From Magallana gigas (Eukaryota): a stretch of 64,000 bases of DNA. The stretch covers positions 10,354,001-10,418,000 of the forward strand of contig NC_088854.1 of assembly GCF_963853765.1 (NCBI RefSeq). The letters run 5' to 3'. This document shows, piece by piece, positions 4,952 to 44,900 of this stretch; positions within the stretch are counted from its first letter, which is position 1, and each line of letters opens with the position of its first letter. A model generated the notes under the pieces. That model searched no databases and was not told the DNA's origin. It worked only from the letters and a program-made list of their open reading frames with translations. The position numbers and the translations under genes were made by a program.

Positions 4952-5909
4952 GGGGTATGGTCACGATTTTGGTCAAACGATCATTTTCCCAACTCTAATG
5001 TTTACAATGCTTCAGTAAGACATTTTTTCTAAGCAACCAAAATCTGAGTGTCATTTTGGGAGTTATAATCGATTTATTAAGCTATGTGAACAAAGCTTTT
5101 GTTTACATTTTAAACATGGAAGTGAAAATTCGAGTTTAAGACCTAAAGGGGCATGGTCACGATTTTTGTCAAATTTTATTTTACTGTTTTTATTATTTAC
5201 AATGCTTAAGGAATGCATTTCTAATGATCAAATGAAATTTAAGAGTCAGTCGTAGAGTTATAAGCAAGATACAGGACTCACAATTCTATGTCATGTAAAC
5301 AAGGCTCGTGCCCCGTTTTGTTTACATAGGTTAAATATACCGGTAAAAACCTTTTTCAAGCTTATTTGTCTATCTTCTTAGTAATTTTAAGCATAAATAA
5401 ACAGTTTTCAACGTTTAACACATTTATTTTAGGTCTAAAACTGAAATTTTCACTTCAACATTCAAAAAGTAAACAAATGCTTTGTTTACATAGCTAAGAA
5501 TTGCAAGCTCTGTAACTCGCTTATAACTCAACGAATCACGCTTTAATTTTCGTTTCCTATTAAAAATGCCTTACGAAAGCATTGTAAACATTAAAATCGT
5601 AAAAATAATGTTTGACCAAAATCGTGACCATGCCCCTTAAGTGTTAAGAACTGTTTATATATGCTTAAAATAAATAAGAAAATAGACAAGTCAGCTTGAA
5701 GAAGATTTTTTACCGATATATTGAACCTGTGTTAACTAAAATACGGCACGAGTCTTGTTTACATGGCAAAGAATTGTGAGCCTTGTATCTTGCTTATAAC
5801 TCTACGACTTATTCTCAAATTTAAATTGATCATTAGAAATGCCTTTTTAGAGCGTTGTAAATGATAAAAACAGAAAATTAGAATTTGGCCAAAATCGTGA
5901 CAATGCTCC
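4952..5909. mobile_element. Two nested copies of a TTAA-target (Kolobok-type) MITE, inner copy 5148-5636 in opposite orientation
   Basis: TIR GGGG(C/T)ATGGTCACGATTTT(G/T)GTCAAA four times (4952, 5148 forward; 5636, ~5909 reverse); TTAA at 4948-4951 and 5637-5640. Confidence 0.8.
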
Positions 5910-6744: not shown

Positions 6745-6923
6745 ATGTTTACATCTTTCTTTTAACAATTTAATAAACTGATTGTAAAAAGTAAGTAAAA
6801 TTCACTAAATTACTAATTTTTTAAAAAATTTTTTTTTTGATGGCAAAAAGTTTTATGATATTAATTTCATTTGCACATACAATATATCATACAATATATA
6901 TATACATGTAAGTATATTTAGCA

Positions 6924-8707
6924 TAAAAAGCTGTACGTACAGATAGAAGAGCATACATAGATGCCTTAGCAACAAAAGCAGAAGAGGCAGCCAACAAAGG
7001 GGAACAAGGAAATCTATACAAAATAACAAAAGTAATATGTGGGAAAAACAGACCATCACCAAACCTTCCCATCAAAGACAAACAAGGAAAGCTGATAACA
7101 TCAGAGAATGAAATGGTGGAACAGTGGACAGAACATTTTAAGGAGATCTTAAACAGACCACCTCCGATCCATGAACCTGAAATCAGTGAACCCGAATCAG
7201 AGTTGAATATCAACACCAATCCACCAGACGTTCCAGAAATTACATCGGCCATACAGTGTTTTAAAAATGGGAAATCTCCTGGGAGTGCCAATTTAAATGC
7301 TGAGCTATTCAAAACGGACCCACTCCTTACAGCTACCATCCTCCAACCAACCTGCAAAGAAATCTGGGAAAGTAAGACCATACCAGATCAATGGAATCAC
7401 GGAGTCATCATTAAAATACCAAAAAAAGGAAATTTAAATGACTGTAATAACTGGCGTGGAATAACACTTTTCTCCATTCCAAGTAAAATCATGGCTAAAA
7501 TTATCATCAGAAGAATATCCAAAGCCGTAGATGTCAAACTACGGAAGGAACAAGCAGGGTTCAGACCAGGACGAGGATGTATCGACCAAATATTCACACT
7601 GAGAAACATCATTGAACAGTGTACGGAATGGCCTTCGACAGCATTCATAGAAACAGTCTCTGGAGAATTGTGCGTTCGTACGGCATCCCCCAACATCTTA
7701 TAGACATCATCAAGAGTTTCTACGTCAACTTCAGATGCAAAGTTGGAAACTCAAGCATCGAGTTTGATGTCAAAACTGGAGTTCGCCAAGGTTGTGTAAT
7801 GTCATCAACGCTCTTCATCATAGCCACCGACTGGGTCATGAGGAACACAACATCAGACATCCCAAGAGGCATTAGATGGGGAACGTTCACAACACTTGAA
7901 GACTTGGACTTTGCCGATGATATTGTCCTGTTTTCCCACTCCCATCAGCACATCCAAGACAAAACACATAGGCTCCACGAGTATGCTGGATACATTGGAC
8001 TGAAGATCAATGCCAAGAAAACTGAAGTCATGACCCTAAATGTGAATAACCCACAAGGAATTAAAATGGACAATTACATCCTTCCATATACAAACAACTT
8101 TACTTATTTAGGGAGTATTGTCACAACAGATGGTGGAGCAGACAGGGACATTCAGCAGAGACTAGCCAAGGCCAGAGCAGCATTTAAGAACTTGCAAGCT
8201 GTGTGGAAATCCAGCCAGTATACCAACAGGACAAAGCTCAAACTGTACAAAAGCTGCATCATACCAATTCTTTTGTACGGTTCAGAGTGCTGGAGAATGA
8301 CAGAGAACGACCTTAACAAACTGTCAACTTTCCACACCAAGTCACTGAGAAGAATCCTAAAAGTAGTTTAGCCAAATACCATCTCAAATCAGGACCTTCT
8401 CAGCAGATGCGATCAGGAGGATATGGCCACCATCATCACCAGGAGACGATGGACCTGGATTGGCCACATAATCAGAAGGGACCCTGAATCCATCATAAAG
8501 ACAGCCCTCTTCTGGACACCAGAAGGAAAAAGGAAGAGAGGGAGACCAAAAGTTACCTGCCGGCGAACAGTGGAAGCCGAGATGAAAAAGCATCAGAGAA
8601 GCTGGGGCACTCTCCAGAAGCTAGCCAGTGACAGACAGGGATGGAGAGCCCTCGATACTGCCCTATACGCCAAAGGCGTCACGGGCAGTAAGTAAGTAAG
8701 TAAGTAA
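6924..8707 (+). mobile_element. 5'-truncated RTE-clade LINE, reverse transcriptase pseudogene with (TAAG)n tail
   Basis: NWRGITL, EQAGFRPGRGC, GVRQGC, LDFADD, LLYGSECW; deletion/frameshift near 7630; TAG (likely from TGG) at 8369-8371; tail (GTAA)n from ~8688; TSD gtaagtatatttagca at 6908-6923 and 8708-8723. Confidence 0.93.
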
Positions 8708-9044
8708 GTAAGTATATTTAGCACAATTGAAAAGTCTGTTGACAGGATCAATTTTAACAAATTTAAGGGAGAGAAAATGAGGAACAGTAGGAAATGGAGA
8801 GTGGGGGGAGAGAGTGGGGGAATTATGAGGATACATGTATCATGTCAGAAATATTTTATTAATAATTAGGCGTAATCAAAATATTTACTGCCGAGTTGTT
8901 GTATTCAGACAAGGTATATATAAATCGTGCCTTATGTAAATATGTCAATGGTCGGGATCTACATGTACATGAGAAAAAGCCAGTCAGTTCATTGGTTTAA
9001 GAAATTATTATATTTGCCTTGTTTTGTTGCAGTGTATTTAAGTG

Positions 9045-9649
9045 TACTGTAAACGAGGTTATATTGCCGAGTTCAAAATTTGACGATTTTATAGTAAGAG
9101 ACAATTGGCGAGTTTTAATTTTGACGAATTTTTTAATAAGAGCAAGAGTTATCTATCTTTGATGTTTTTATAATGCCAGGGTTAGAGTTATCTTTCTTGC
9201 GAACTCTTTTACAAGCGTTGGTTTTAATAAAATTTATCTTTGATTGAAAAAAAAGTATGTACAGATTTGATGGAATAAAATTGTTCATTGTATTTTGTTT
9301 TACTATACGATACTGCCTGAGGTAATAAAGTTGGTCACACACGGCATGATAATTACGCACGCAAAGTTATTATAGAATGTTGTGACGATTGAGTGATAAT
9401 TGCATTTAAAACATGCTTGATTAGATTTTATGGGTTTTTTCAATGCTAATTACGTGTTTTTATAGCTATTTACATAAAGGAATCATTAACTTTGATCTAG
9501 TCCTAACGGGATAATGCCGATAAAAAATTCTGGTATTAATACGCTATATATATGATGTGAAGTTTGGCGAGTGGAAATTTTGACGAGAAAATAAAAATCG
9601 CCAACATAGTCAAAATTAACACATCGTCAAAATGTCCACGTTTACAGTA
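9045..9649. mobile_element. TA-target MITE (Tc1/mariner-like) inserted in Tx1 ORF2
   Basis: Termini TACTGTAAACG...CGTTTACAGTA; removing it with one TA restores the frame HITTLKYTATKQGKYNNFLNQ. Confidence 0.8.
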
Positions 9650-12600
9650 GTTATATGGGTTTTGAGATCAATCAAGTTCATGGATTGATAAGTTTCCTGT
9701 AGACATCTTTTCCTGTATCTGTAAGATTTGATTATAAGAAAAATTATACCCAAATAAATTGAATTAGGGGTTCCTAATATAAATGATTTTTCTTCTAATG
9801 TAATATGTAAACCTTTTCTGTCACATATTGATATAAAGTGGCTTAAAAGATTTTGGACATGTAAACAGTCCCAAAACAGATGCATGATAGTTTCTTCGTT
9901 ACTTTGACATAAAGAACACAACTTTGTGTCAGTTTTACCTATTTTAAATAAAAATGAGTTTGTTGTCAAAATATACTGATTTATTCTAAATTGCAACCAT
10001 TGCAATTTAGAATCTTTGGTGTATAAAAAAGGAAATGTGAAGATATTTTCCCACTGAAGGTCTGAAATTTCAAAAAACTTTCCCCATTTTACTTTACCAA
10101 GAGGAGTAATTTTTTCTGTAGTCAGAATATTGTAGATATGTTTTTTGTTGTTACAAAATGTTTTAATATTATGAGGAAGAAATGGTCTAGGGCTATTTGT
10201 TCCAATTTGAATTTTTGAGCTTGAGAGACTTGCTTTAATTGAATTTCTAAGAATAATTCATATAATTTGTTTTTATCTTAATTTTTTTTCGTAAATCTTC
10301 TGAAGAATAAAAATTTCCATTTTCATCAAGCAAATCTGCTATGTATACTATGTTCTTATCAAACCAGTTTGTATAGAAAACTGTTTTATTTTCAATTTTG
10401 ATTTTCGGGTTGTTCCAAATAGGCTGAGTAATAAATTCATCCCATGATTGAACTTATAAATTTTCTTGAATTATTTGAAAGACAGTAAATGTATCTTTCC
10501 AGAAAGGATTTTTTATTTCCTTTTTAACAACATTAATATAGTCTGGTCCAGTTTTTAATATTTTTTCTATAGATACAGTTTTGCCAAGCAGCACTTTCCA
10601 TTTTGTTTCTTGGGAATAAAGAATTCTTTTTATCCATGATGATTTTAATCCCAGATTGTAATTATAAATATCAAGCATTTTTAAACCTTCATTAATATAG
10701 TCTTGCACTACTTGCTTTCTTTTAAGTTTATCTACTTTGGAATGCCATAAAAAATTTAAAAGAGTTTCATTCAGATTTTTCATGAAAGTATTTGATTGGG
10801 AGGGTAGAGAAATGAAGAGGTGATTGAATTGTGCAATAAGCAATGATTTTATCAGAGTTAATCTGCCAAGTGGAGTAAGTCGTCGTTTACTCCATTGATT
10901 AATGATATGCTTGATTTTTACTTATTTCTTGTCATAATTAAGTTTTGGTATATTTGTTAAGTCCACATCAAAATATATACCTAAAAGTTTAATGGTGCTT
11001 GTCCATTGAAAGTTCATTTCCTCACATATTATATTATAAGAGTATTTTTTATTACCAATCCAGACAAGTTGAGTTTTTGATATATTTATTTTGAGACCAG
11101 AAATTTGATAAAAGTTATTTAACTCTCTAATTGCTTCTCTGAGAGACCTCTCACTGCCATCTAATATAATAAGGGTATCGTCTGCATATTGTGATAACAA
11201 AAATTCTGAATTATCTATGTTAATACCATTTATACTTTTACTATTTTTTAATTTAATAGCTAGTACTTCAGCACATAGTAAAAAGGTATATGATGAAATT
11301 AGGTCACCCTGAAGACAACCACGCTCTAATTTAAAAAAGTTGGATAAGTGACCTGCTTGTGATTCAGAGGAGGAGGTGTTTTGTTGAAAAACTGATATCC
11401 ATTTTCTGAGCGATGGACCAAATTTAAAGAATTGAAGCGTTTTATCAATAAATTTCCATGAGACAGAGTCAAATGCCTTTTCAAAATCAATCATTAACAA
11501 TAATCCAGGAATGTCATTATTCTCGGTATATTGCATTAAATCATAAACAAGACGAGTATTTTCACCTATATATCTTCCTGGAACAAAGCCATTTTAATCA
11601 GTACTGATAATTGAACTGATTATTGTTTTCATTCTTTGAGCAATGCAGCCTGACCCTATTTTATAAACTACGTTTAATAAAGAGACTGGCCTCCAATTTT
11701 TCATGTAAAATTTACTTTTTCCATCTTTTGGTATGCAGGTGATTATACCCTGCTTTTGTGTAACAGATAACTCCCCTAGATTGTATCCGTGATTTATTGA
11801 TCTAATAACAAAGTCTCCTAAGTATTTCCAAAAGACTTTAAAGAACTCTGTAGTGAAACTGTCACTTCCAGGACTCTCATTATTCGACATTTTTTTCAAT
11901 ACATGATAGTCTTCATTCTAAGTTATTTCACCTTCAAGGGTATTTCTTTGAGTATCGCTTAATTTAATTATTCAGAGTCTGATTCTAGAATCTCATTTAA
12001 ATCATAGTCTTGAAATTCACCCTTGTTTTGATATAGATTTCTATAATAATTTTCTATCTCTAACAGGATTTCCTTTTGTCCATTAATTTCTTCGGAACAA
12101 TCTTCTTTTATTAATTTTGGGACAATTTTATTTACAAAATTTCTATTCTCAAGATTAAGAAAGTAACTTATTGGTTTCTCTCCTTCACAGGTCCATTTAG
12201 CTCTTGATCTTACTAGACTTCCCATGAGTTTGTGATTTCTGATATTTTCTAATTCTTTCTTTTTAAAATTAATTGTTTGAATGTTTTCTTCATACTTTTC
12301 CTCCAGCTGTTTTATTTGGTTTATAAAAAATTTCTCCTTTTCGTTATTTTTCTTTTTGGCATAGCTAGAATATGATATACATTTGCCCCTGATTTCCATT
12401 AATAGTGTTTCAAGAAAGAGCTGGTCATTGACAGTGAATTGAATTTCATCATTTGGAATTTTGTCAATAGATGCATTGTTATATACAGGTACTGCATAAT
12501 TTTGTTTTATTTCTTGTATTTTTTTATTAACAACATATAGGAATTCCTTATCATATAAAAGTGCATTATTGAACTTCCATAAACCTTTTCCATGTGTAAA

Positions 12601-14700
12601 TTCATTGAGTTTTAGACTAAGGAGTACTGGTGAATGATCTGACTTATAACTTGCTATGATTTCACTTTCTTGTGACATACATAGTAGGGTATTTGATATT
12701 AAAAAGAAATCTAGTCTTGCTTGTTTAAGAGGGGTTGGTTTACGCCATGTATACCTTTTCTTATCAGGGTGAGTTCCTCTAAAAATATCAATAAGATTGA
12801 ATTGATTTATTTTTTCTATTACTTTATCTCTTGCATTAGGATTGTTAAGATGAAGATAATTGTAATAATCCATATCGGGATCCATAATAAGATTAAAATC
12901 ACCAACAACTATTCTGTCTTTATTTCCTATTTCACTTACAATTAACTAAATTACTATTAATGTACATCAGTACGTTAGCAAGAAACAGCCAAATCGTTTC
13001 ATTTGGGAATTTAAAACTGCCATCATCCTGATTATTTCGTGCATTCCGTGATTTTGTTTATAGGTCTATGTAGGTTTCGACCAATCGATAAACTGGGCAT
13101 GTTGACTTCAGTCTGGCTTTTTCTATTGAGCTATGAATTAACTTTAAGTTTTCGTAAGAAATAGAAAGAATCATACTCGGTAGAAGTAAATATAAATCTA
13201 TTATGTTAAATGAAAAAGCTAAGTCAAAAGCCTTCGTATTCTTTGATTGACCCTCGTATCTTTCTAAAAAATCATGTAACATTGCATTAATTATATTGAC
13301 GTTCTGTCTCTTCGTCGGAAACTCGCCATTGATTACGCTACATTTCTAGAAAAGTACTCAAACGTGGGCTTTTGGACGACAGTATTTACGTAATTGGACA
13401 ACAAGCGCATAAAAAAGGTATTAAAAATTCAGTACATGCATTTAAAGTTTACTTCATTGAAGTTTAGTAATGTTATTCGGGTTTACCAAATAATTGTATG
13501 ACAAAAAGCCCAACACCGGAGACGCATGCAATGGTTGAAAATCTCAGTCTTAATAAGAATTGGATCCATGTCTCTAAACTCTTCCATCTCTATTGTCTGG
13601 TCACAAAAAATGTGTAAAATAATTGTTAGCTAAAAATGTCTAAACCAAACATCGATTTAAATACATTAGAGTTACATACCATTTTAATATTTGGAACATG
13701 ATTAACATTTGTTAATATCAGTAGGTGATGAATTAGCGAGTCTAAAATTATGACTCGATATGTCCATGAAAAGGTAAGTTTTTTTTAATATTCAAAACAA
13801 TGAACCAAATTAATTCAGAAAAAATTAACTGAGAATTCAAGTATTTTCTTTTGTCCAAATCAAATATGAAACTTAGACATGGTATGAAGTAATAAATGAC
13901 GCAACTCAAGTTTCAAAATGAATAACGATTTTACATGACAACGGTGCGAAAAACCATCGTTTTAAGATGAGCCACTTTTTTTTAACACAATGTATATACA
14001 ATATACAGTGAGTTTGAATATGCTTTCTAACAACTTACAAGGTTCTCGCTCTATTTCAAATAATGTACAGTTCTCATATACATAATATATGGAACAAGAG
14101 AGGTTATTTAAGTAACTTTTCATTTATAGGATTCCGAATCAGGCCCCGAGGTTAAAAAACTTTCTTGATTACGATCTCATACTCCAAATCGTACTCCGTG
14201 CTCCAAATCGTACTCGTACTCAAGGTATCGGGGTTATAAAACTTTTTCATACTCATACTCCGGCTGAGTACAAAACGGCGATTTTCTGAGTAAGATTTGG
14301 AGCTTTCTCAAAGTCGTACTCAAGACATTAAATCTAAATAAAATGTAGTGCAAACATATAATATTGTTCATATTGTAATGTTGCTGTATTATACGCTATA
14401 ATTTAATCATAATTACATATGTACATGTATATGAATTAAAATGGAAAGTTTTTACAATTTCATCAATGACATATCTATAGATTTAATGAAGGTGAATTTA
14501 AGAGTAAGGGCGAGCTCAACCAAGATTATCAAAATAACTTTTAGATATTCTGCTTTATAAATTAATGTACTTATACATTGTACATGTAAATCTACGTACA
14601 AAATTATTTCATTGAATATCTCGACTTTTTAAGAATTCTGTTTTTAGTCAAATACGACCCATACTCCCCATCATTTAAAACCAAGAAATCAATGTACATG

Positions 14701-18000: not shown

Positions 18001-18052
18001 ATGTTCATCGCTCTACTTTTCACTGTCAGCATCGCGGTGTATGGAGTTGCAG
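18001..18052 (+). pseudogene. Orphan signal-peptide exon MFIALLFTVSIAVYGVA(G) with apparently mutated donor
   Basis: ttttacag|aATG; hydrophobic 17-mer ending G-V-A; a phase-1 donor would be expected after it but the sequence reads G|ggaaat instead of G|gtaaat. Confidence 0.4.
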
Positions 18053-19036
18053 GGAAATCTCCTCTGAAAGTAGCTCAGTGTTTTCTATGCTTGATTTATT
18101 TATATAGTATGTCAAATATGACGCTGGATTTTTACGATCAGACTATGATGCATCTACAGTAAGGCCAGATTGTCTGACCTTTATAATACTTCTTGTGTTT
18201 AACCGTTAAACACGGCTCAGACTATATTAAACTCGAGAAGCAGAGATTTTTTTATAAATATATTGAAAAATATTCAAAGTTTGGTGGTAAAACATTTCCA
18301 AATTCTTTTACTATAAAGTTTATAAATCGTAGCAAAAAAAAATAACAATGCTAAGATCCCACTGTCGTATGATCTGTTACAAACACTACGGTTGTAAGAA
18401 CGTAACTTATCTTGGAAATTCTCTATAATATTAGGGTTAGGTACGGGATGATCTATGAGTCTATATGTTCTTAAGCGAATTGATATGGGCTTTGATACGA
18501 TAGACATATTTCAGTGCGTATCAATACGGTGATATGCAATTTCTTGAGCTTTGATACAATACTATCACGATAGATACTTCGCAGGGACGCAGTCTGTCCA
18601 ATTCAAGATGGAAGATGGTCTCAAACTGAGCTACGATTACTCGACAACAAATCTAATTAGCCCGACTGACCCTATTGGCACGTCGCAGCTGAATGCAGTA
18701 TGGTGCTTGTTTCCCGTAAGATTAATTCATATCAACATGATTATTGGGGGGGGGGGGGGTTAAATGCGATGTGTTTAGTAACGATACATTGCGACCTGAT
18801 ACGATGATAGCAACTAATTACGATTAAAAATTTGTTGTGTTGATCGTGAAAAAAAAAATGACTCAAAAACTGATCCACGATTAAGGCGAATGCCACAGCA
18901 TACATAAGATTTAATGAGAATTGATGCGATTACTAGGATAACTCTACGATCAAATCCGCGATTTTAATTGCATGCGTTGTGAATCGTGATAGTGAGAACG
19001 TAGCATTAAGAATAATTCTGTTAAAATAAGGTATTT

Positions 19037-19565
19037 ATGGCCTTGTGCATTTGTTTGTCCACTTATGATGCTGCTGATGTTTGGATTTATCGAATATCAT
19101 TTTGGGCGCCAATATTCCGTGTCATTTTGGTACGTACGATTTGAACAGCGGTGTTGAAATTTCCTTAAAAGAATTTCTGAGTGCTACAAGAGGCTTCACA
19201 AAAATGGATCCAACTACACTGTTTGAACGCTTGGACACAAATGGTAAGTGAATTGCTTGAGGATGGTTAATCACTTTTTAACACATGGGACCCTGACATT
19301 AGTAACTCTATTTAAATGCTGTAGGATTATGGTTTTTTTATGTTTAAACCAACATGTTACCTTCTGAATTGTTTCAGGTGACGAGACTATCAGTATAGAC
19401 GAATTTACTCACGTAGACCCAACTTTGGGAGATGCGGGAATCATTCCTCGTTGTCGGCGTGGTTGGTGCGTGTCTATTAAAATTGGATGCATTACTATTA
19501 CTATCAGTTCTGACAGGCAGACGCCTACCCAAGCTGAAAGTGAAAAAAATTCTTCTGAGAATTAA
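19037..19565 (+). pseudogene. Small secreted double EF-hand precursor with furin site and C-terminal Cys-pair peptide; signal peptide frameshifted (pseudogene or assembly indels). Exons 19037-19243, 19378-19565
   Basis: Open frame 19078-19243, AAT G|gtaagt donor, gtttcag|GT acceptor (phase 1); EF loops DLNSGVEISLKE and DTNGDETISIDE; RCRR at 19449-19460; stop 19563-19565; AATAAA 19578. Removing 1 C (19059-60) and 1 T (19086-88) gives MALCICLSLMMLLMFGLSNIILGA. Confidence 0.7.
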
Positions 19566-21073
19566 AAATGTATGTTAAATAAACATCAGAGAATGGAATT
19601 ATTTGTTTTGAATTGCATAGTAAGGAAAGTTTATGGCTACATGTATATACATAATATGTGAACTGCAAAACTCATTTAAGCGACGATGATCAAAGTTTAG
19701 CTAAGGTTATCCAAGAATTCTAGAGGAATTCTACATATGAAAGATAACAAAGACAGACAGACATACTTTTCAGGGTTAGATTGGTTTGACACCATAAAAG
19801 TTTAAAGGTCAGGCACAGTTTAAAAAAACAAGGGAAGGGGTGTGAAGAGAAAATTAGTCGACATAATGTACATTCACGCATATTTTCATATGCGGGGGTA
19901 GGAGTGAGGTCGCCAAGAAACTCCGAGAGACAGAAGCCTTTGAAAAGACTTCTTTTTTTTCACTTTAATCAACTCTTCTATGCAGTTACTCTGGCAAACC
20001 GGAAGTAAAACAGTGTTTGCCCCTAAGGACAAATCATCAACGCTGACAAAACGTAGTACTTGAGAATAATCGATAAATCCGATGTAATGTATTTTGAAGC
20101 ATTGTTTGTTAAGAAAACTTACTTATAAAAACCTTAAAAATAGTCAGATTTTTTATAGTACGAAAAATTTAGATATTTTTTGTAGTCGTATGTATTCCTA
20201 CGCAAAAGCTCGATTACAGCGGTAGCAACAAACTGTCCAATCTAAAGATAGAACCAGTACTGGCGTATTCTAGATCTCATTATCATTTGCTTGTTAAAAA
20301 CTGCTTTGATACACTTTTCAAAAATATTTTAATTACAGATACATTATATATCGTAGATTTTGATCGCGTTAATTCTATCTTTGTATATTACACAACGTGG
20401 TTCATATGGAGTTTTCCGTCTATAGCTGGGAATTCTTGTCGGAAAATCCCGTTAGAAAACAATGTGCGTAATTATTCAAATACAGCTGAGAAACTACTTG
20501 CCATGCGAAATAACATATGTTGACATCAAAATAAATAATAATCAGTAAAATCAACTCCCGTCATTACAATGTACTTGATTAAAAGGCAAAACCGTTCAAA
20601 TTGCCTTAATTTTAAATATATTTGTTTTCCTGTTAATGTATATTTGTCTGTACAACTAATGTACGTATATTTCCTTTTTAGAAAGTTTGTACAAAATATT
20701 GTATCCCCCCCCCCCCCGAAGTTGGTCAATTAAGTTAAAATAACTCAGCTGGGGCTTCATCCTGGATAGTCAGGTAATCCGCCATTAGATCTTCCTAATT
20801 TAGATAAAAATTTTAGCCATTAAAAATATTCTTTAAGAAAAATTATTCAATGTTTTAGCTATAAATATTGAATTGTTTCCTATATCTTCTTCAAAACTCT
20901 CCTTCTAAAAGGAAATACAGTATAAACATCCCTCTTGTCAAATAAGGATATATAAAGTGTCTTTTTGAAATACAACTCCAAACTTAAAAGACCAATATAT
21001 GCTCCAAGTATATTTTTTGTGGTTGGGGAGGGGGTATTTTATAGAGAAACACAAAAAAAGGATTTAGCTTTAA

Positions 21074-41900: not shown

Positions 41901-44900
41901 GAATAGCAAGCAAGAATAAAGAAAGCCATTCCTGCAGTTCAGCAAATAGAATGTAATGATTTTTCACATCTCGGAGAATATGGCATCTCTTTTCGAAGAT
42001 GTAGTAATAACTTGCTTAGAGAAAAATTGCTTATATCTTTTAATAAATGAGCCCTCTTATTCTTTGTATGAGAGTGGGTCATTAGCAGCTACAAGCCAAT
42101 GACAATAATACCAATGTGTCCTATATGATCTGTGAAGGAGCAAAATTATGAAAAAGAACAATTCTAAAGAGATTTAGCACTCAGATGAGGATGAGTCAGG
42201 CAAGATATGTATTGGCAGTACTGATAAGGACAGAAGTATTAGAGAGAAAATGATGAATGAATGTGCAGAAAAACAATCCCGCACTACAATGATTGTGTGA
42301 GTATGGGAAACGAACCATGTAATATGTGAATGAGAAAATGGAGACATTATGTTGAGCTAATTATTCTTATGTTTTCTTTCAAAAAACCTCTAAATACATA
42401 TTGTGGCTTAATTATACTGAGATTACTGCAGTGACATCTGTGTTTAAAAAAAGGAGACCTGTGATATAAAAATAAAACATTTCTGATATAAGTAGTCCAC
42501 TGAACTTGACCAACTTCCTTACATTTGGAAAGCCAAAGGGTTCAATATTCTATCTATGTAATTATGTACCTGTGTTTTCGTTGTGTTATTCATTCAATGT
42601 AAATGGCAATGGCGTTGGAAGCAAATTGAAAGTGGGGGGGGGGGGGGTTTACTTATCAGAAATCTTGACAAGCAAAAAAACAAAAAGAAGAAAAAGGTCA
42701 AGACTATATTTCTTACTTTGCAAAAAAACTGGGGAGGCTAAGCCCCCCCCTTCCTCTAGTTCCCAAATCATATGGATGGAGAAATGTTGATTTTTAAATC
42801 TGTTATTCATTCTTCGAATATTGTATATAAGGATCTGTAAAACATCATTTGTAAGATTTTTCAGATTTTGGTAAATTGTTGATTCATAATCCGTTTGATG
42901 CAAGTTTGACATTTGTACTCGGTCATTTGTGATTCTTATTTTTAGATTTGTAAGGTAATGTATCATTATGACGACAGGGGGCGCATGCTACGTCTAATTT
43001 TTGGAAACAGACTATAGAACCAAGGTATCCTCTCAGCATGTACAACAGTTTTATAATAGTACATTATCATACAAATCTCGAAATAAAAATCAAATGATGC
43101 AAATACAAATGTCAAACTTGCATCAAACTGATCATGAATCAACAATTTACTGAAACCCAATTTACAAATGGTGTTAATCGAAGACTAAGTAACAAAGTTA
43201 AAAATTAACATTTCTCCTTTTACATACTGAATCCTTTGGCTTTCCATACTCACACGTTCAATGACTTGCTAATTATATATACTGTTAAACATATATACCC
43301 TTCAAAAACAATGATTATTTAGATACATGTATCAGAAAAGGTACACACCATCACACAATGATGTATTGAATAATGTAAATACCTTTTTCTGTTTGAACTT
43401 GATGGCCAGTTTTAGCCGACTGAGCTTCATCTTGTCTGTGGGTTTGGGCTCAATTTCCTGTTCCCCCTCAGAGTAGGCCGGATTGGTCGTGTCATGGTTC
43501 AGAATCACCTCCAGCTCCTTGGATCCGCGGATCTGATCCAGTAAATCCACCGCAAATTCTTGGCACTTTTTGGCTAATTTTTCATAATCCAACTTGAACT
43601 CATTCTCAAGTTTGCTAAGTCTCCGAAGTTCCCAGCTCAATTCAAAAGAAGTCAGAATCGGGTCTTTACTGGATAAAGCTATGAGTGAGGGGCTTGCCAA
43701 TGCCCGGTAGGCATTGATGCGTGACCGACTGTGACGGAGGCTGTCATCAGTACTTTCATTGATGCATGACTTACAGTGACACTTGATGTTGTGGGGTTTT
43801 GGAATTCGGTAGCCCCTGTCTAAGAGTAGTTTGATGATTTCATAGTTGTCCCGATGAGCTGCCAGAATAATTGGGGTTATATCTGGAGTGAATGAGCTTG
43901 AAGGAACACTCTGGTGTAGAGACTGAAAAAGACAAACAGGTTGTGTGGTCAAAAATGTAAAAACCCCACCATCTTATTATAGAATAAAAATCAAAGCTAC
44001 ATTATTGTTATGTTTGATAAAAATGTTATCAAAGTCAGGTTTGTTTTGCAAATGGGAAAATATTAAGAATCTGCGTCAAGAACAATATAAATCAATAGTT
44101 TTAAATACATGTATAGTTTAACTATCATACTCATCATAAAATTTCATTGCTGTATCAATTACATGCGCCTTTATAATTTTTAAAGAAAATCACTGCTTAA
44201 GGGGGCTGGATGGTTGTGGCCATTTTTAGACTGTATTGATCTCTTTTCGAAGAAGAGCTCGATCTATAAAAAAATATAGAAAATACCCAAATCAAAAAAG
44301 GTTATTTAATATGGTGTTTCTCTTTACTAAAAGATAGTTCATAACTAAAAAATTCATATTTTAAAATTTAAGGTAGATCTGATGGTTAATTTGGTGACCA
44401 CACAGCCCCCCTAATATTTATGTTTATCAATGTCATTATAAAACTGCCACTCAACTGAAGAAAACTGATGAAGGTTAACTCAAGGGCAATGCGCATATGT
44501 ATAGATCTTTAGATTCAGAAAAATGATGGAGGCAGAATGACTAACTTAATCTGCATAAAATTTCTGACTTCTGTCCACATCTGCTTCAAGTACAAATTCA
44601 TGCATCACTTTGAGGGCTATATTTTGTGACAATGGAGGGCAACTGCCCCTAATCATATTCAAAATATTGGTGATAATAAACAGCCGAGAATGTGGGGATT
44701 GAGACTTTTGTCTTGTTTTCTAATGGTTTTAGACCTTCCAATGTGTTCATAGTTATAAGAAAAGAAGAGCAAGAGGCACTATCATTGTTCCAGGGTTCAA
44801 ATTATAATACTCAATGCACAGTTTACAATGTATATTGTAGATAATAAATAAGTCCTTGGGATTTGTATAAAACTGCACCTGCAGATTAATAGAATTAAAA

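What the first reader, a model, noticed from the sequence alone, without database searches (positions are those of the whole stretch)
19037..19565. Candidate novel secreted peptide precursor: signal peptide - EF-hand pair - furin site - disulfide beta-hairpin-like peptide
Seen: two exons joined in phase encode NIPCHFGTYDLNSGVEISLKEF...LDTNGDETISIDEF...PRCRR|GWCVSIKIGCITITISSDRQTPTQAESEKNSSEN. Known: R-X-R-R is the furin/PC consensus; EF loop 2 (D-N-D..I..E12) is near canonical and loop 1 is degenerate. Beta-hairpin peptides such as arenicins are made with a chaperoning prodomain (BRICHOS), and mussel mytimycin precursors carry an EF-hand extension. Inference: cleavage would release a 34-aa peptide whose first 17 residues alternate hydrophobic/polar around a C-x6-C pair, followed by an acidic tail. 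A Ca2+-binding prodomain could hold a beta-aggregating or membrane-active peptide until processing (defence, adhesion or shell matrix). The odd Cys in RCRR may be a CpG decay of CGT (RRRR). I do not recognise this architecture as a named family.
Basis: partly seen in the sequence, partly recalled or inferred. Interest (0 to 1): 0.8.

Follow-up and report, generated by a model that had tools for sequence, protein, structure and literature searches.

The report
Crippled oyster secreted EF-hand gene copy
The stretch is a real three-exon gene of a small, oyster-restricted and so far uncharacterised family of secreted calcium-binding (EF-hand) proteins, but this copy has lost a splice site and part of one calcium site, and its "furin site plus peptide" is the family's conserved cysteine-rich end rather than a demonstrated released peptide.

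Summary
The two in-phase exons are real (19105-19243 and 19378-19565). The splice sites, intron position and AATAAA signal are conserved in four related oyster contigs and in Crassostrea.

ATG 19037 lies in another frame, inside intron 1. The true signal-peptide exon is 18001-18069.

The conceptual 131-aa product matches, end to end (137.6 bits), a family of 110-121-aa secreted EF-hand-pair proteins. RefSeq annotates them only as "uncharacterized" in C. gigas, C. angulata and C. virginica.

All members carry four cysteines and a C-terminal motif G-I-x-x-H/R-C-x-R-x-x-C-x(2-6)-C. The "odd" Cys of RCRR is one of these four. A strict R-x-R-R occurs only in the window and its nearest relatives. 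The 3' tail evolves almost neutrally.

This copy looks crippled:
- TG replaces the AG acceptor of intron 1, which all five compared sequences keep.
- Two window-specific substitutions remove loop positions 5 and 6 of EF-hand 1.

A second family exon (13486-13602, minus strand) is a relic.

The precursor idea is not excluded for the family. A basic cluster always precedes the last Cys pair, and one subfamily always ends in Gly or Gly-Lys-Arg. It remains untested.

The earlier scan notes hold no finding of this gene family.

The parts
18001..18069 (+). Coding exon 1: start codon and signal peptide (23 codons, predicted cleavage after VAG), followed by donor GTAGCT in phase 0
   Evidence: tblastn of P0004, P0010, P0020, P0021 and P0024 residues 1-23 hits here (45-52% identity). 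The layout matches C. angulata L001, including the 'tttag|aATG' context.
18070..19104 (+). Intron 1 (1035 nt). It ends in TG (19103-19104), not AG
   Evidence: Alignments A2 and A5: the window reads CATTTTG|GGCGCC. L005, L007 and L002 read CATTTAG|GGCGCC, L003 reads CATTCAG|GGTGCC, and C. angulata reads TATTTAG|GACGTT.
19105..19243 (+). Coding exon 2: conserved Cys (IPCHF), EF-hand 1 (degenerate loop at 19138-19176), linker GFTKMDP, and the first 3.3 codons of EF loop 2
   Evidence: 66-70% identity to Crassostrea exon 2. 95% DNA identity to L005 against 80-89% in the introns. A language-model search calls it EF-hand, score 0.94.
19244..19377 (+). Intron 2 (134 nt, GTAAGT...TTTCAG, phase 1)
   Evidence: The position is conserved in L001, L002, L003 and L005.
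19378..19565 (+). Coding exon 3: rest of EF loop 2 (to 19406), the G-I-I-P-R-C-R-R-G-W-C-x6-C motif (19437-19490; RCRR at 19449-19460), a Thr/Ser/Pro-rich tail (19491-19562), and stop TAA
   Evidence: The core is 97.6% identical to L005 and the tail 91.9%. Against L002 the tail is 74.6% identical, versus 78% for the introns.
19578..19583 (+). AATAAA polyadenylation signal, 13 nt after the stop
   Evidence: It is conserved in L005, L007, L002 and L003.
13486..13602 (-). Solitary exon-3 relic of the Trp-ending subfamily (DQTIEMEEF...HCMRLRCWAFCHTIIW). The acceptor AG is missing and no exons 1-2 are found
   Evidence: tblastn gives E 7e-17 and 74% identity to C. angulata P0025. The window has TTTTTTGT where L014 has TTTTTAG|GT. 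No exon 1 or 2 was found.

Best explanation
The locus is a three-coding-exon member of an oyster-restricted family of small secreted proteins. Its layout is signal-peptide exon 18001-18069, exon 2 at 19105-19243 and exon 3 at 19378-19565.

Each family member has a signal peptide, one EF-hand pair and a C-terminal motif G-I-x-x-H/R-C-x-R-x-x-C-x(2-6)-C, then a short variable end. There are four conserved cysteines, one in the entering helix of EF-hand 1 and three at the C-terminus. Shown here: homology, gene structure, Cys pattern and Pfam EF-hand matches of the homologues.

Inferred mechanism for the family: an extracellular Ca2+-loaded EF-hand pair whose basic and hydrophobic C-terminal segment is held by two disulfides, one probably to the N-terminal Cys. 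That segment would be the functional surface, and the protein would most likely act as a single chain. I put this at about 0.5. The cleaved alternative is listed as a rival.

The window's lineage carries a longer Cys loop (x6) and a fast-evolving Thr/Pro/Ser-rich extension.

The copy in this window has TG in place of the intron-1 AG acceptor. It also has window-specific substitutions at positions 5 and 6 of EF loop 1 (Asp to Gly, Gly to Val). I therefore read it as a recently inactivated gene or a null allele, at about 0.6-0.65.
For: Family membership:
- The profile search with the two window exon-3 pieces found 8 hits, including full-length P0004.
- Named homologues are C. gigas LOC105333400, LOC105345404, LOC105348303 and LOC105333399, C. 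angulata LOC128192442, LOC128192183 and LOC128156596, and C. virginica LOC111126654.
- The conceptual 131-aa product scores 137.6 bits against an HMM of ten Crassostrea proteins, over model positions 1-107 of 111.
- The homologues pass the Pfam EF-hand_1/5/6 cut-offs.
- C31, H96, C97, R99, C102 and C106 are invariant in alignment A6. Mature proteins have 4 Cys, or 6 in C. virginica.

Gene structure:
- The C. angulata gene has the same three exons and the same intron phases.

Lesions:
- AG to TG at 19103-19104 is unique to the window among six sequences.
- Codons 39 and 40 read GGT GTT in the window. L005, L007, L002 and L008 read GAT GGT or GAT GGG there.
- No AG lies between the last in-frame stop (19075-77) and exon 2. 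I checked the nearest upstream AG (19029-30) and two AGs inside exon 2 by eye; each gives an early stop in phase 0 (read).

Relatives also decay:
- L002 has a 14-nt deletion in exon 3. The L008 group (16 contigs) has a 1-nt deletion at the exon-2 start.
- The 13.5-kb copy is an exon-3 relic.
Against: - Exons are clearly more conserved than introns between the window and L005: 95-98% against 80-89%.
- Window-branch changes are about 4 non-synonymous to 4 synonymous. Any inactivation is therefore recent, and the gene could still be functional.
- TG acceptors are used in rare cases.
- The other haplotype, or other individuals, may carry AG.
- No expression data could be consulted.
- The single-chain reading has no direct support. 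AlphaFold leaves the last 14 residues unmodelled, with pLDDT under 50.
- No function is known for any family member.
Confidence: 0.7

Rival explanations
1. The proteins are peptide precursors. The EF-hand pair, with its own disulfide (C31-C97), is a prodomain. A proprotein convertase cuts in the basic cluster. A small, hydrophobic, disulfide-looped peptide is released, which in one subfamily is C-terminally amidated. In the window the released product would be the 34-residue GWC...C peptide.
For: - A basic cluster always sits directly before the last Cys pair. R-x-x-R or a dibasic pair is present in all members seen except the 13.5-kb relic.
- Two Cys lie upstream of the cluster and an even number lie downstream: 2, or 4 in C. 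virginica (CCWICLFCFG).
- One subfamily always ends in Gly (P0004, P0010, P0020, P0041, P0044, P0022, P0043) or in Gly-Lys-Arg (P0019, P0007, P0042) while the neighbouring residues vary. From general knowledge, these are the classical amidation signals.
- The C-terminal part is the most variable region behind a conserved framework, as in toxin or AMP precursors.
- AlphaFold does not pack the last 14 residues on the domain.
- Precedent for an EF-hand part next to a dibasic site in a bivalve AMP precursor comes from mytimycin (PMC8004829).
Against: - Strict R-x-[KR]-R is not conserved. The invariant residues are C-x-R and a preceding His, which fits a structural motif equally well.
- The Trp-ending subfamily and the window's subfamily have no amidation signal.
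- The EF-hand part is the better conserved part, and it is a complete folded domain rather than a spacer.
- No peptide or proteomic evidence was found.
- For the window copy itself, the broken acceptor makes production of any product doubtful.
Confidence: 0.2
2. The window copy is an intact, expressed gene. Either the TG at the end of intron 1 is a private allele or a consensus error of the assembly, or it is used as a non-canonical acceptor. The altered EF loop 1 would be a tolerated or adaptive change, giving a one-site Ca2+ binder.
For: - All three exons are open, and the donors, the intron-2 acceptor and the AATAAA are intact.
- The exon cores are 95-98% identical to L005, well above the introns.
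- Loop position 6 is also unusual (Trp) in the apparently intact L003 gene.
Against: - Three independent window-specific substitutions all hit functionally critical positions: acceptor position -2, loop position 5 and loop position 6.
- Substitution errors are not the typical assembly artefact.
- No spliced product of this subfamily turned up among the candidates of the profile search.
- Sister copies in related genomes carry frameshifts.
Confidence: 0.3
3. There is no gene. The ORFs and motifs are chance products of AT-rich sequence.
Against: The product matches the family profile end to end at 137.6 bits. The exon-intron structure is conserved across genera.
Confidence: 0.01

Closest known systems
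Crassostrea 'uncharacterized protein' paralogues: C. gigas LOC105333400 (XP_011434651), LOC105345404, LOC105348303, LOC105333399; C. angulata LOC128192442, LOC128192183, LOC128156596; C. virginica LOC111126654
   Same: Same three-exon structure, signal peptide, EF-hand pair, GFTKMDP linker, four Cys and G-I-x-x-H-C-x-R-x-x-C motif. Overall protein identity is 42-58%. The genes lie in local clusters (L001 holds a tandem pair).
   Different: The window's lineage has Arg for the invariant His, a six-residue rather than a 2-3-residue last Cys loop, and a 25-residue tail after the last Cys against 4-9 residues. The window copy lacks the intron-1 AG and two EF1 loop residues.
Extracellular molluscan EF-hand proteins of the shell matrix: Lottia gigantea EF-hand calcium-binding domain-containing protein 1 (B3A0Q5), Pinctada EFCBP (Huang et al. 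2007, cited in PMC6231486), abalone Hdh-SMP5 (PMC10741955)
   Same: These are secreted molluscan proteins built on EF-hands. B3A0Q5 is the best Swiss-Prot structural match of the model (E 9e-3, 29% identity over 87 residues).
   Different: The match is weak and at the level of the generic EF-hand fold. Those proteins are longer or have three EF-hands, and they lack the C-terminal Cys motif. No family member was found in the shell-proteome texts searched.
Mytimycin precursors of mussels (PMC8004829)
   Same: A bivalve secreted precursor in which an EF-hand part is separated from a Cys-rich peptide by a dibasic site.
   Different: The order is reversed: there, the 12-Cys mature peptide comes first and the EF-hand is a C-terminal extension. 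No sequence relationship was seen in any search.
Two-EF-hand proteins such as polcalcins and single calmodulin lobes
   Same: The fold of the 60-70-residue core is shared, with TM 0.54-0.63 to polcalcins.
   Different: Those are cytosolic or pollen proteins without a signal peptide, cysteines or a basic Cys-rich C-terminus.
BRICHOS-type precursors of beta-hairpin peptides (arenicins)
   Same: Only the general idea of a folded prodomain followed by a C-terminal disulfide-bonded peptide.
   Different: Pfam finds no BRICHOS domain in the homologues, only EF-hand families.

Membership tests
Oyster small secreted EF-hand-pair / four-Cys family (C. gigas LOC105333400-like) | End-to-end sequence similarity to the family profile | tested here: met
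   HMM of A6 against the conceptual three-exon product: 137.6 bits over model positions 1-107 of 111. blastp gives 42-58% identity, E 1e-29 to 1e-43.
Oyster small secreted EF-hand-pair / four-Cys family (C. gigas LOC105333400-like) | Separate first coding exon with the signal peptide, a phase-0 intron, and a phase-1 intron in the Gly codon of EF loop 2 | tested here: met
   Exon at 18001-18069, with the same layout as in C. angulata L001.
Oyster small secreted EF-hand-pair / four-Cys family (C. gigas LOC105333400-like) | Four conserved Cys and the C-terminal G-I-x-x-H-C-x-R-x-x-C-x(n)-C motif | tested here: met
   All four Cys and the C-x-R are present. His is replaced by Arg, and the loop has n=6 rather than 2-3.
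Oyster small secreted EF-hand-pair / four-Cys family (C. gigas LOC105333400-like) | Intact gene with canonical splice sites and an open frame | tested here: not met
   The intron-1 acceptor is TG in the window and AG in L005, L007, L002, L003 and C. angulata. The frames themselves are open.
EF-hand (Pfam PF00036 / PF13405 / PF13499) | Two helix-loop-helix units with 12-residue Ca2+ loops (ligands at positions 1, 3, 5 and 12, Gly at 6) | tested here: inconclusive
   Homologues pass the Pfam cut-offs, and the exon-2 piece is called EF-hand by the Atlas. The window's separate exon pieces give no Pfam hit because loop 2 is split. Loop 1 has Gly5/Val6 and loop 2 has Glu6, so Ca2+ binding by loop 1 is doubtful.
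Furin / proprotein-convertase-processed peptide precursor | A conserved R-x-[KR]-R (or dibasic) site at the prodomain-peptide boundary | tested here: inconclusive
   RCRR occurs in the window, L005/L007, P0033 and P0035. L002 and P0034 have RCPR, L003 has HCRRR, Crassostrea has LRRR, QRRR, KRLR, RRFR or RRLR, and the 13.5-kb relic has MRLR. A basic cluster is conserved but the strict consensus is not.
Furin / proprotein-convertase-processed peptide precursor | Demonstrated cleavage and a free mature peptide | not testable with these tools
   Needs peptidomics or in vitro cleavage. No literature on any family member was found.
Mytimycin-type precursor | An N-terminal 12-Cys mature peptide followed by a dibasic site and a C-terminal EF-hand extension | tested here: not met
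   The architecture here is EF-hand pair first and a 3-Cys end last, with no 12-Cys domain.
BRICHOS precursor (arenicin-like) | BRICHOS domain | tested here: not met
   Only EF-hand families are found in the homologues.

The most novel reading that the evidence does not exclude
The whole oyster family may be a new type of peptide precursor. A Ca2+-binding EF-hand pair, closed by its own disulfide, would serve as prodomain or carrier. A convertase cut in the conserved basic cluster would release a tiny, hydrophobic, disulfide-looped peptide. In one subfamily that peptide would be C-terminally amidated (Gly or Gly-Lys-Arg ends). It would diversify quickly between paralogues, in a conopeptide- or AMP-like layout. 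The window's lineage would be a variant with a longer loop and a glycosylatable tail.
Probability: 0.2. Interest if true: 0.65.

Novelty: new member of a known kind. Interest (0 to 1): 0.3.

Why it matters
For this locus the result is mainly corrective. It gives the right gene model, places the copy in an existing but unnamed oyster family, and shows that this copy and its neighbour are decaying.

The family itself is more interesting than this copy. It has about ten annotated Crassostrea genes and more in other oysters. All are secreted EF-hand pairs with an invariant Cys/His/Arg end. One subfamily ends in amidation-type signals. Nothing is published on any of them.

If the C-terminal piece is released, the family would be an unrecognised class of bivalve signalling or defence peptides. 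If it is not released, these are extracellular Ca2+-binding proteins that could be tested for roles in shell formation or haemolymph. The locus also shows lineage-specific turnover of such genes, with independent lesions in three related genomes.

Tried and rejected
- **Pfam on separate exon pieces.** No hits, because EF loop 2 is split by the intron. I replaced this with Pfam on the homologues and a local family HMM.
- **Atlas on exon 3.** Unrecognised, with only chance lantibiotic-like neighbours at 0.47-0.65. Disregarded.
- **Apparent hit CHFGSYN at 5049.** Stop codons lie close on both sides in that frame, so I took it as chance.
- **Exons 1-2 of the 13.5-kb paralogue.** Not found with sensitive tblastn or a split-loop regex.
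- **Alignment A3.** MAFFT placed the exon-3 fragments on EF-hand 1, because of the internal repeat EF...FTKMDP / EF...FTHVDP. I discarded it and used trimmed fragments instead (A4, A8).
- **AlphaFold on full-length P0004.** Poor, with pLDDT 54. The mature-domain model is usable for the EF pair only. The C-terminal motif is unresolved, so disulfide connectivity could not be inferred.
- **Literature searches.** LOC and UniProt identifiers gave nothing. CGI_10012241, an acidic EF-hand larval shell protein, could not be linked to the family because the paper's supplements are not held.
- **Search with the spliced 131-aa protein.** I did not type it into the big database tools, since it has no reference and typing long sequences is discouraged. 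An exact look-up of a spliced transcript of this copy was therefore not done.
- **Species of the window and of the Logan runs.** Not determined. The window is not C. gigas, C. angulata or C. virginica, because their homologues are only 42-58% identical.

Full report
**What is in the sequence**

The window is AT-rich DNA (33% G+C, no N).
- It carries LINE-type reverse-transcriptase fragments at 6.9-12.9 kb.
- It carries a TRPC channel gene on the minus strand, with TRP_2 and ankyrin exons at 43 and 50 kb.

The ORF 19081-19243 ends at a textbook donor (AATG|GTAAGT). A 134-nt intron ends in TTTCAG|GT. The joined frame then runs to TAA at 19563-65, and AATAAA follows 13 nt later. The junction rebuilds an EF-hand loop (DTNG|DETISIDEF).

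The signal peptide proposed at 19037 does not exist.
- ATG 19037 and ATG 19065 are in the other two frames.
- The EF frame is closed by stops at 19066-68 and 19075-77.
- No AG lies between those stops and the conserved sequence.

**Homologues and the true gene model**

A profile of the window's exon-3 piece plus a similar minus-strand exon at 13486-13602 (A1) was searched against 1.84 billion representatives. It found eight proteins.

One hit, P0004, is full-length (112 aa). It has a signal peptide, two canonical EF loops and a C-terminal HCLRRRCWAICIDIHVG. It is C. gigas XP_011434651, 'uncharacterized protein LOC105333400'.

A fragment-augmented profile (A4) then recovered a family.
- In C. 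gigas: LOC105345404, LOC105348303, LOC105333399, K1QXQ7 and A0A8W8N116.
- In C. angulata: LOC128192442, LOC128192183 and LOC128156596.
- In C. virginica: LOC111126654.
- It also recovered many ORF calls on short oyster contigs.

The C. angulata gene (L001, a tandem pair) has three coding exons: signal peptide, then EF1 and linker, then the rest.

The same tblastn run placed the signal-peptide exon of the window gene at 18001-18069. It reads MFIALLFTVSIAVYGVAG|KSPLK, with a phase-0 GTAGCT donor and the same 'tttacag|aATG' context as in Crassostrea.

The model is therefore 18001-18069 / 19105-19243 / 19378-19565. The conceptual product has 131 residues. It matches an HMM of ten Crassostrea proteins over positions 1-107 of 111, at 137.6 bits. 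The homologues pass Pfam's EF-hand thresholds.

**The family signature and the 'furin site'**

In alignment A6 the invariant residues include C31, G92, I93, H96, C97, R99, C102 and C106. Mature proteins have exactly four Cys, or six in C. virginica.

The window's P-R-C-R-R-G-W-C-x6-C is this same motif.
- Its 'odd' Cys is family Cys C97.
- The second Arg after that Cys is the invariant R99.
- The Arg before the Cys replaces the otherwise invariant His.

The C-terminal table and the third search show three groups.
1. Gly-ending members (...IHVG, ...IHIG, ...INHG/INYG, ...FCFG) or Gly-Lys-Arg-ending members (...ISGKR, ...INGKR).
2. Trp-ending members (...NVIW, ...SIIW). The window's 13.5-kb exon belongs here.
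3. The window's own group (window, L005/L007, L002, L003, P0033-P0035). It has a six-residue loop and a Thr/Pro/Ser-rich tail that differs between species.

Strict R-x-R-R is found only in the window, L005/L007, P0033 and P0035. L002 and P0034 have RCPR, and L003 has HCRRR. A basic cluster is thus conserved, but the furin consensus is not.

**State of this copy**

Orthologous genomic contigs were fetched: L005/L007 (86% identity), L002 (81%), L003/L004 (75%) and L008-L013.

In alignments A2 and A5, every sequence except the window has AG at the end of intron 1. The window has TG at 19103-19104.
- The nearest upstream AG (19029-30) and the two AGs I checked inside exon 2 each lead to an early stop in phase 0. 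I read this.

The window alone has GGT GTT (Gly-Val) at loop-1 positions 5 and 6. L005, L007, L002 and L008 have GAT GGT or GAT GGG (Asp-Gly) there.

Exon cores are much better conserved than introns: 95-98% against 80-89% versus L005, and 88-92% against 78% versus L002. The tail is not: 92% versus L005, and 75% versus L002.

Window-branch changes are roughly four non-synonymous to four synonymous. The gene was therefore under constraint until recently. The lesions are young, or confined to this haplotype.

Decay is not unique to the window.
- L002 has a 14-nt deletion inside EF loop 2.
- The L008 group has a 1-nt deletion at the first codon of exon 2.
- The window's 13.5-kb copy keeps only exon 3. 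It has lost its acceptor, whereas L014 from a related oyster holds a complete gene of that subfamily.

**Structure**

AlphaFold on the mature domain of P0004, with a 24-row alignment, gives a confident EF-hand pair (pLDDT 78-89). The last 14 residues have no confident structure. The full-length run was poor.

Foldseek finds only generic EF-hand pairs. The best Swiss-Prot match is the Lottia gigantea shell-matrix protein EFCB1 (E 9e-3), followed by polcalcins.

**Interpretation**

I file the locus as a member of this unnamed oyster family and read the window copy as probably non-functional.

For the family I favour a single-chain extracellular Ca2+-binding protein, with a disulfide-stapled, basic and hydrophobic C-terminus as the working surface.

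- The basic cluster always directly precedes the last Cys pair.
- The Cys split 2 upstream and 2 or 4 downstream of the cluster.
- One subfamily conserves terminal Gly or Gly-Lys-Arg while nearby residues vary. From general knowledge, this is the usual amidation signal.
- Mytimycin precursors give a bivalve precedent for an EF-hand part next to a dibasic site, though in the reverse order (PMC8004829).

None of this shows cleavage. The window's own subgroup also lacks the amidation-type end.

No publication mentions any family member. Secreted EF-hand proteins are known from mollusc shells (PMC10741955, PMC6231486), but I could not link them to this family.

**Verdict**

This is a real gene of an existing, uncharacterised, lineage-restricted family. 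The peptide-precursor reading is untested and is not specifically supported for this copy.

Noticed in passing
window 13486-13602 (-): A lone terminal exon of the Trp-ending subfamily (74% identical to C. angulata LOC128156596). It has an open frame and all Cys kept, but it has no acceptor AG and no exons 1-2 nearby. It is probably a relic beside LINE fragments.
   Followed up: yes
window 6887-12885, both strands: Several ORFs with reverse-transcriptase (RVT_1) and zf-RVT matches. These are fragmented non-LTR retrotransposon copies in opposite orientations.
   Followed up: partly
window ~29000-51000 (-): Exons of a TRPC-type channel gene: TRP_2 domain at 43335-43952 and ankyrin repeats at 50252-50701. 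The EF-hand gene lies downstream of it, in convergent orientation.
   Followed up: partly
L002:~700-760 and L008:~1240: In a related oyster sampled by a large resequencing project, the ortholog carries a 14-nt deletion in EF loop 2 (L002). Another allele carries a 1-nt deletion at the exon-2 start (L008-L013, 16 contigs). These are independent disabling lesions in a sister lineage.
   Followed up: partly
P0003, P0006, P0011, P0012 (Logan ORF calls): In some oyster contigs the family's stop codon appears to be read through (...IHVG-W-NW......NIVW-W-TQ...). The L014 and L015 loci fetched for P0003 did not translate to it, and L014 has a stop after NIVW. If real, stop-loss extensions would offer a possible origin of the long tail in the window's lineage.
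   Followed up: no
window 19180-19218 vs 19401-19424: An internal repeat. Each EF loop is followed by F-T-x-[MV]-D-P-T (FTKMDPT and FTHVDPT). This misleads MAFFT when fragments are aligned.
   Followed up: partly
window 18747-18760: A run of 14 G inside intron 1.
   Followed up: no
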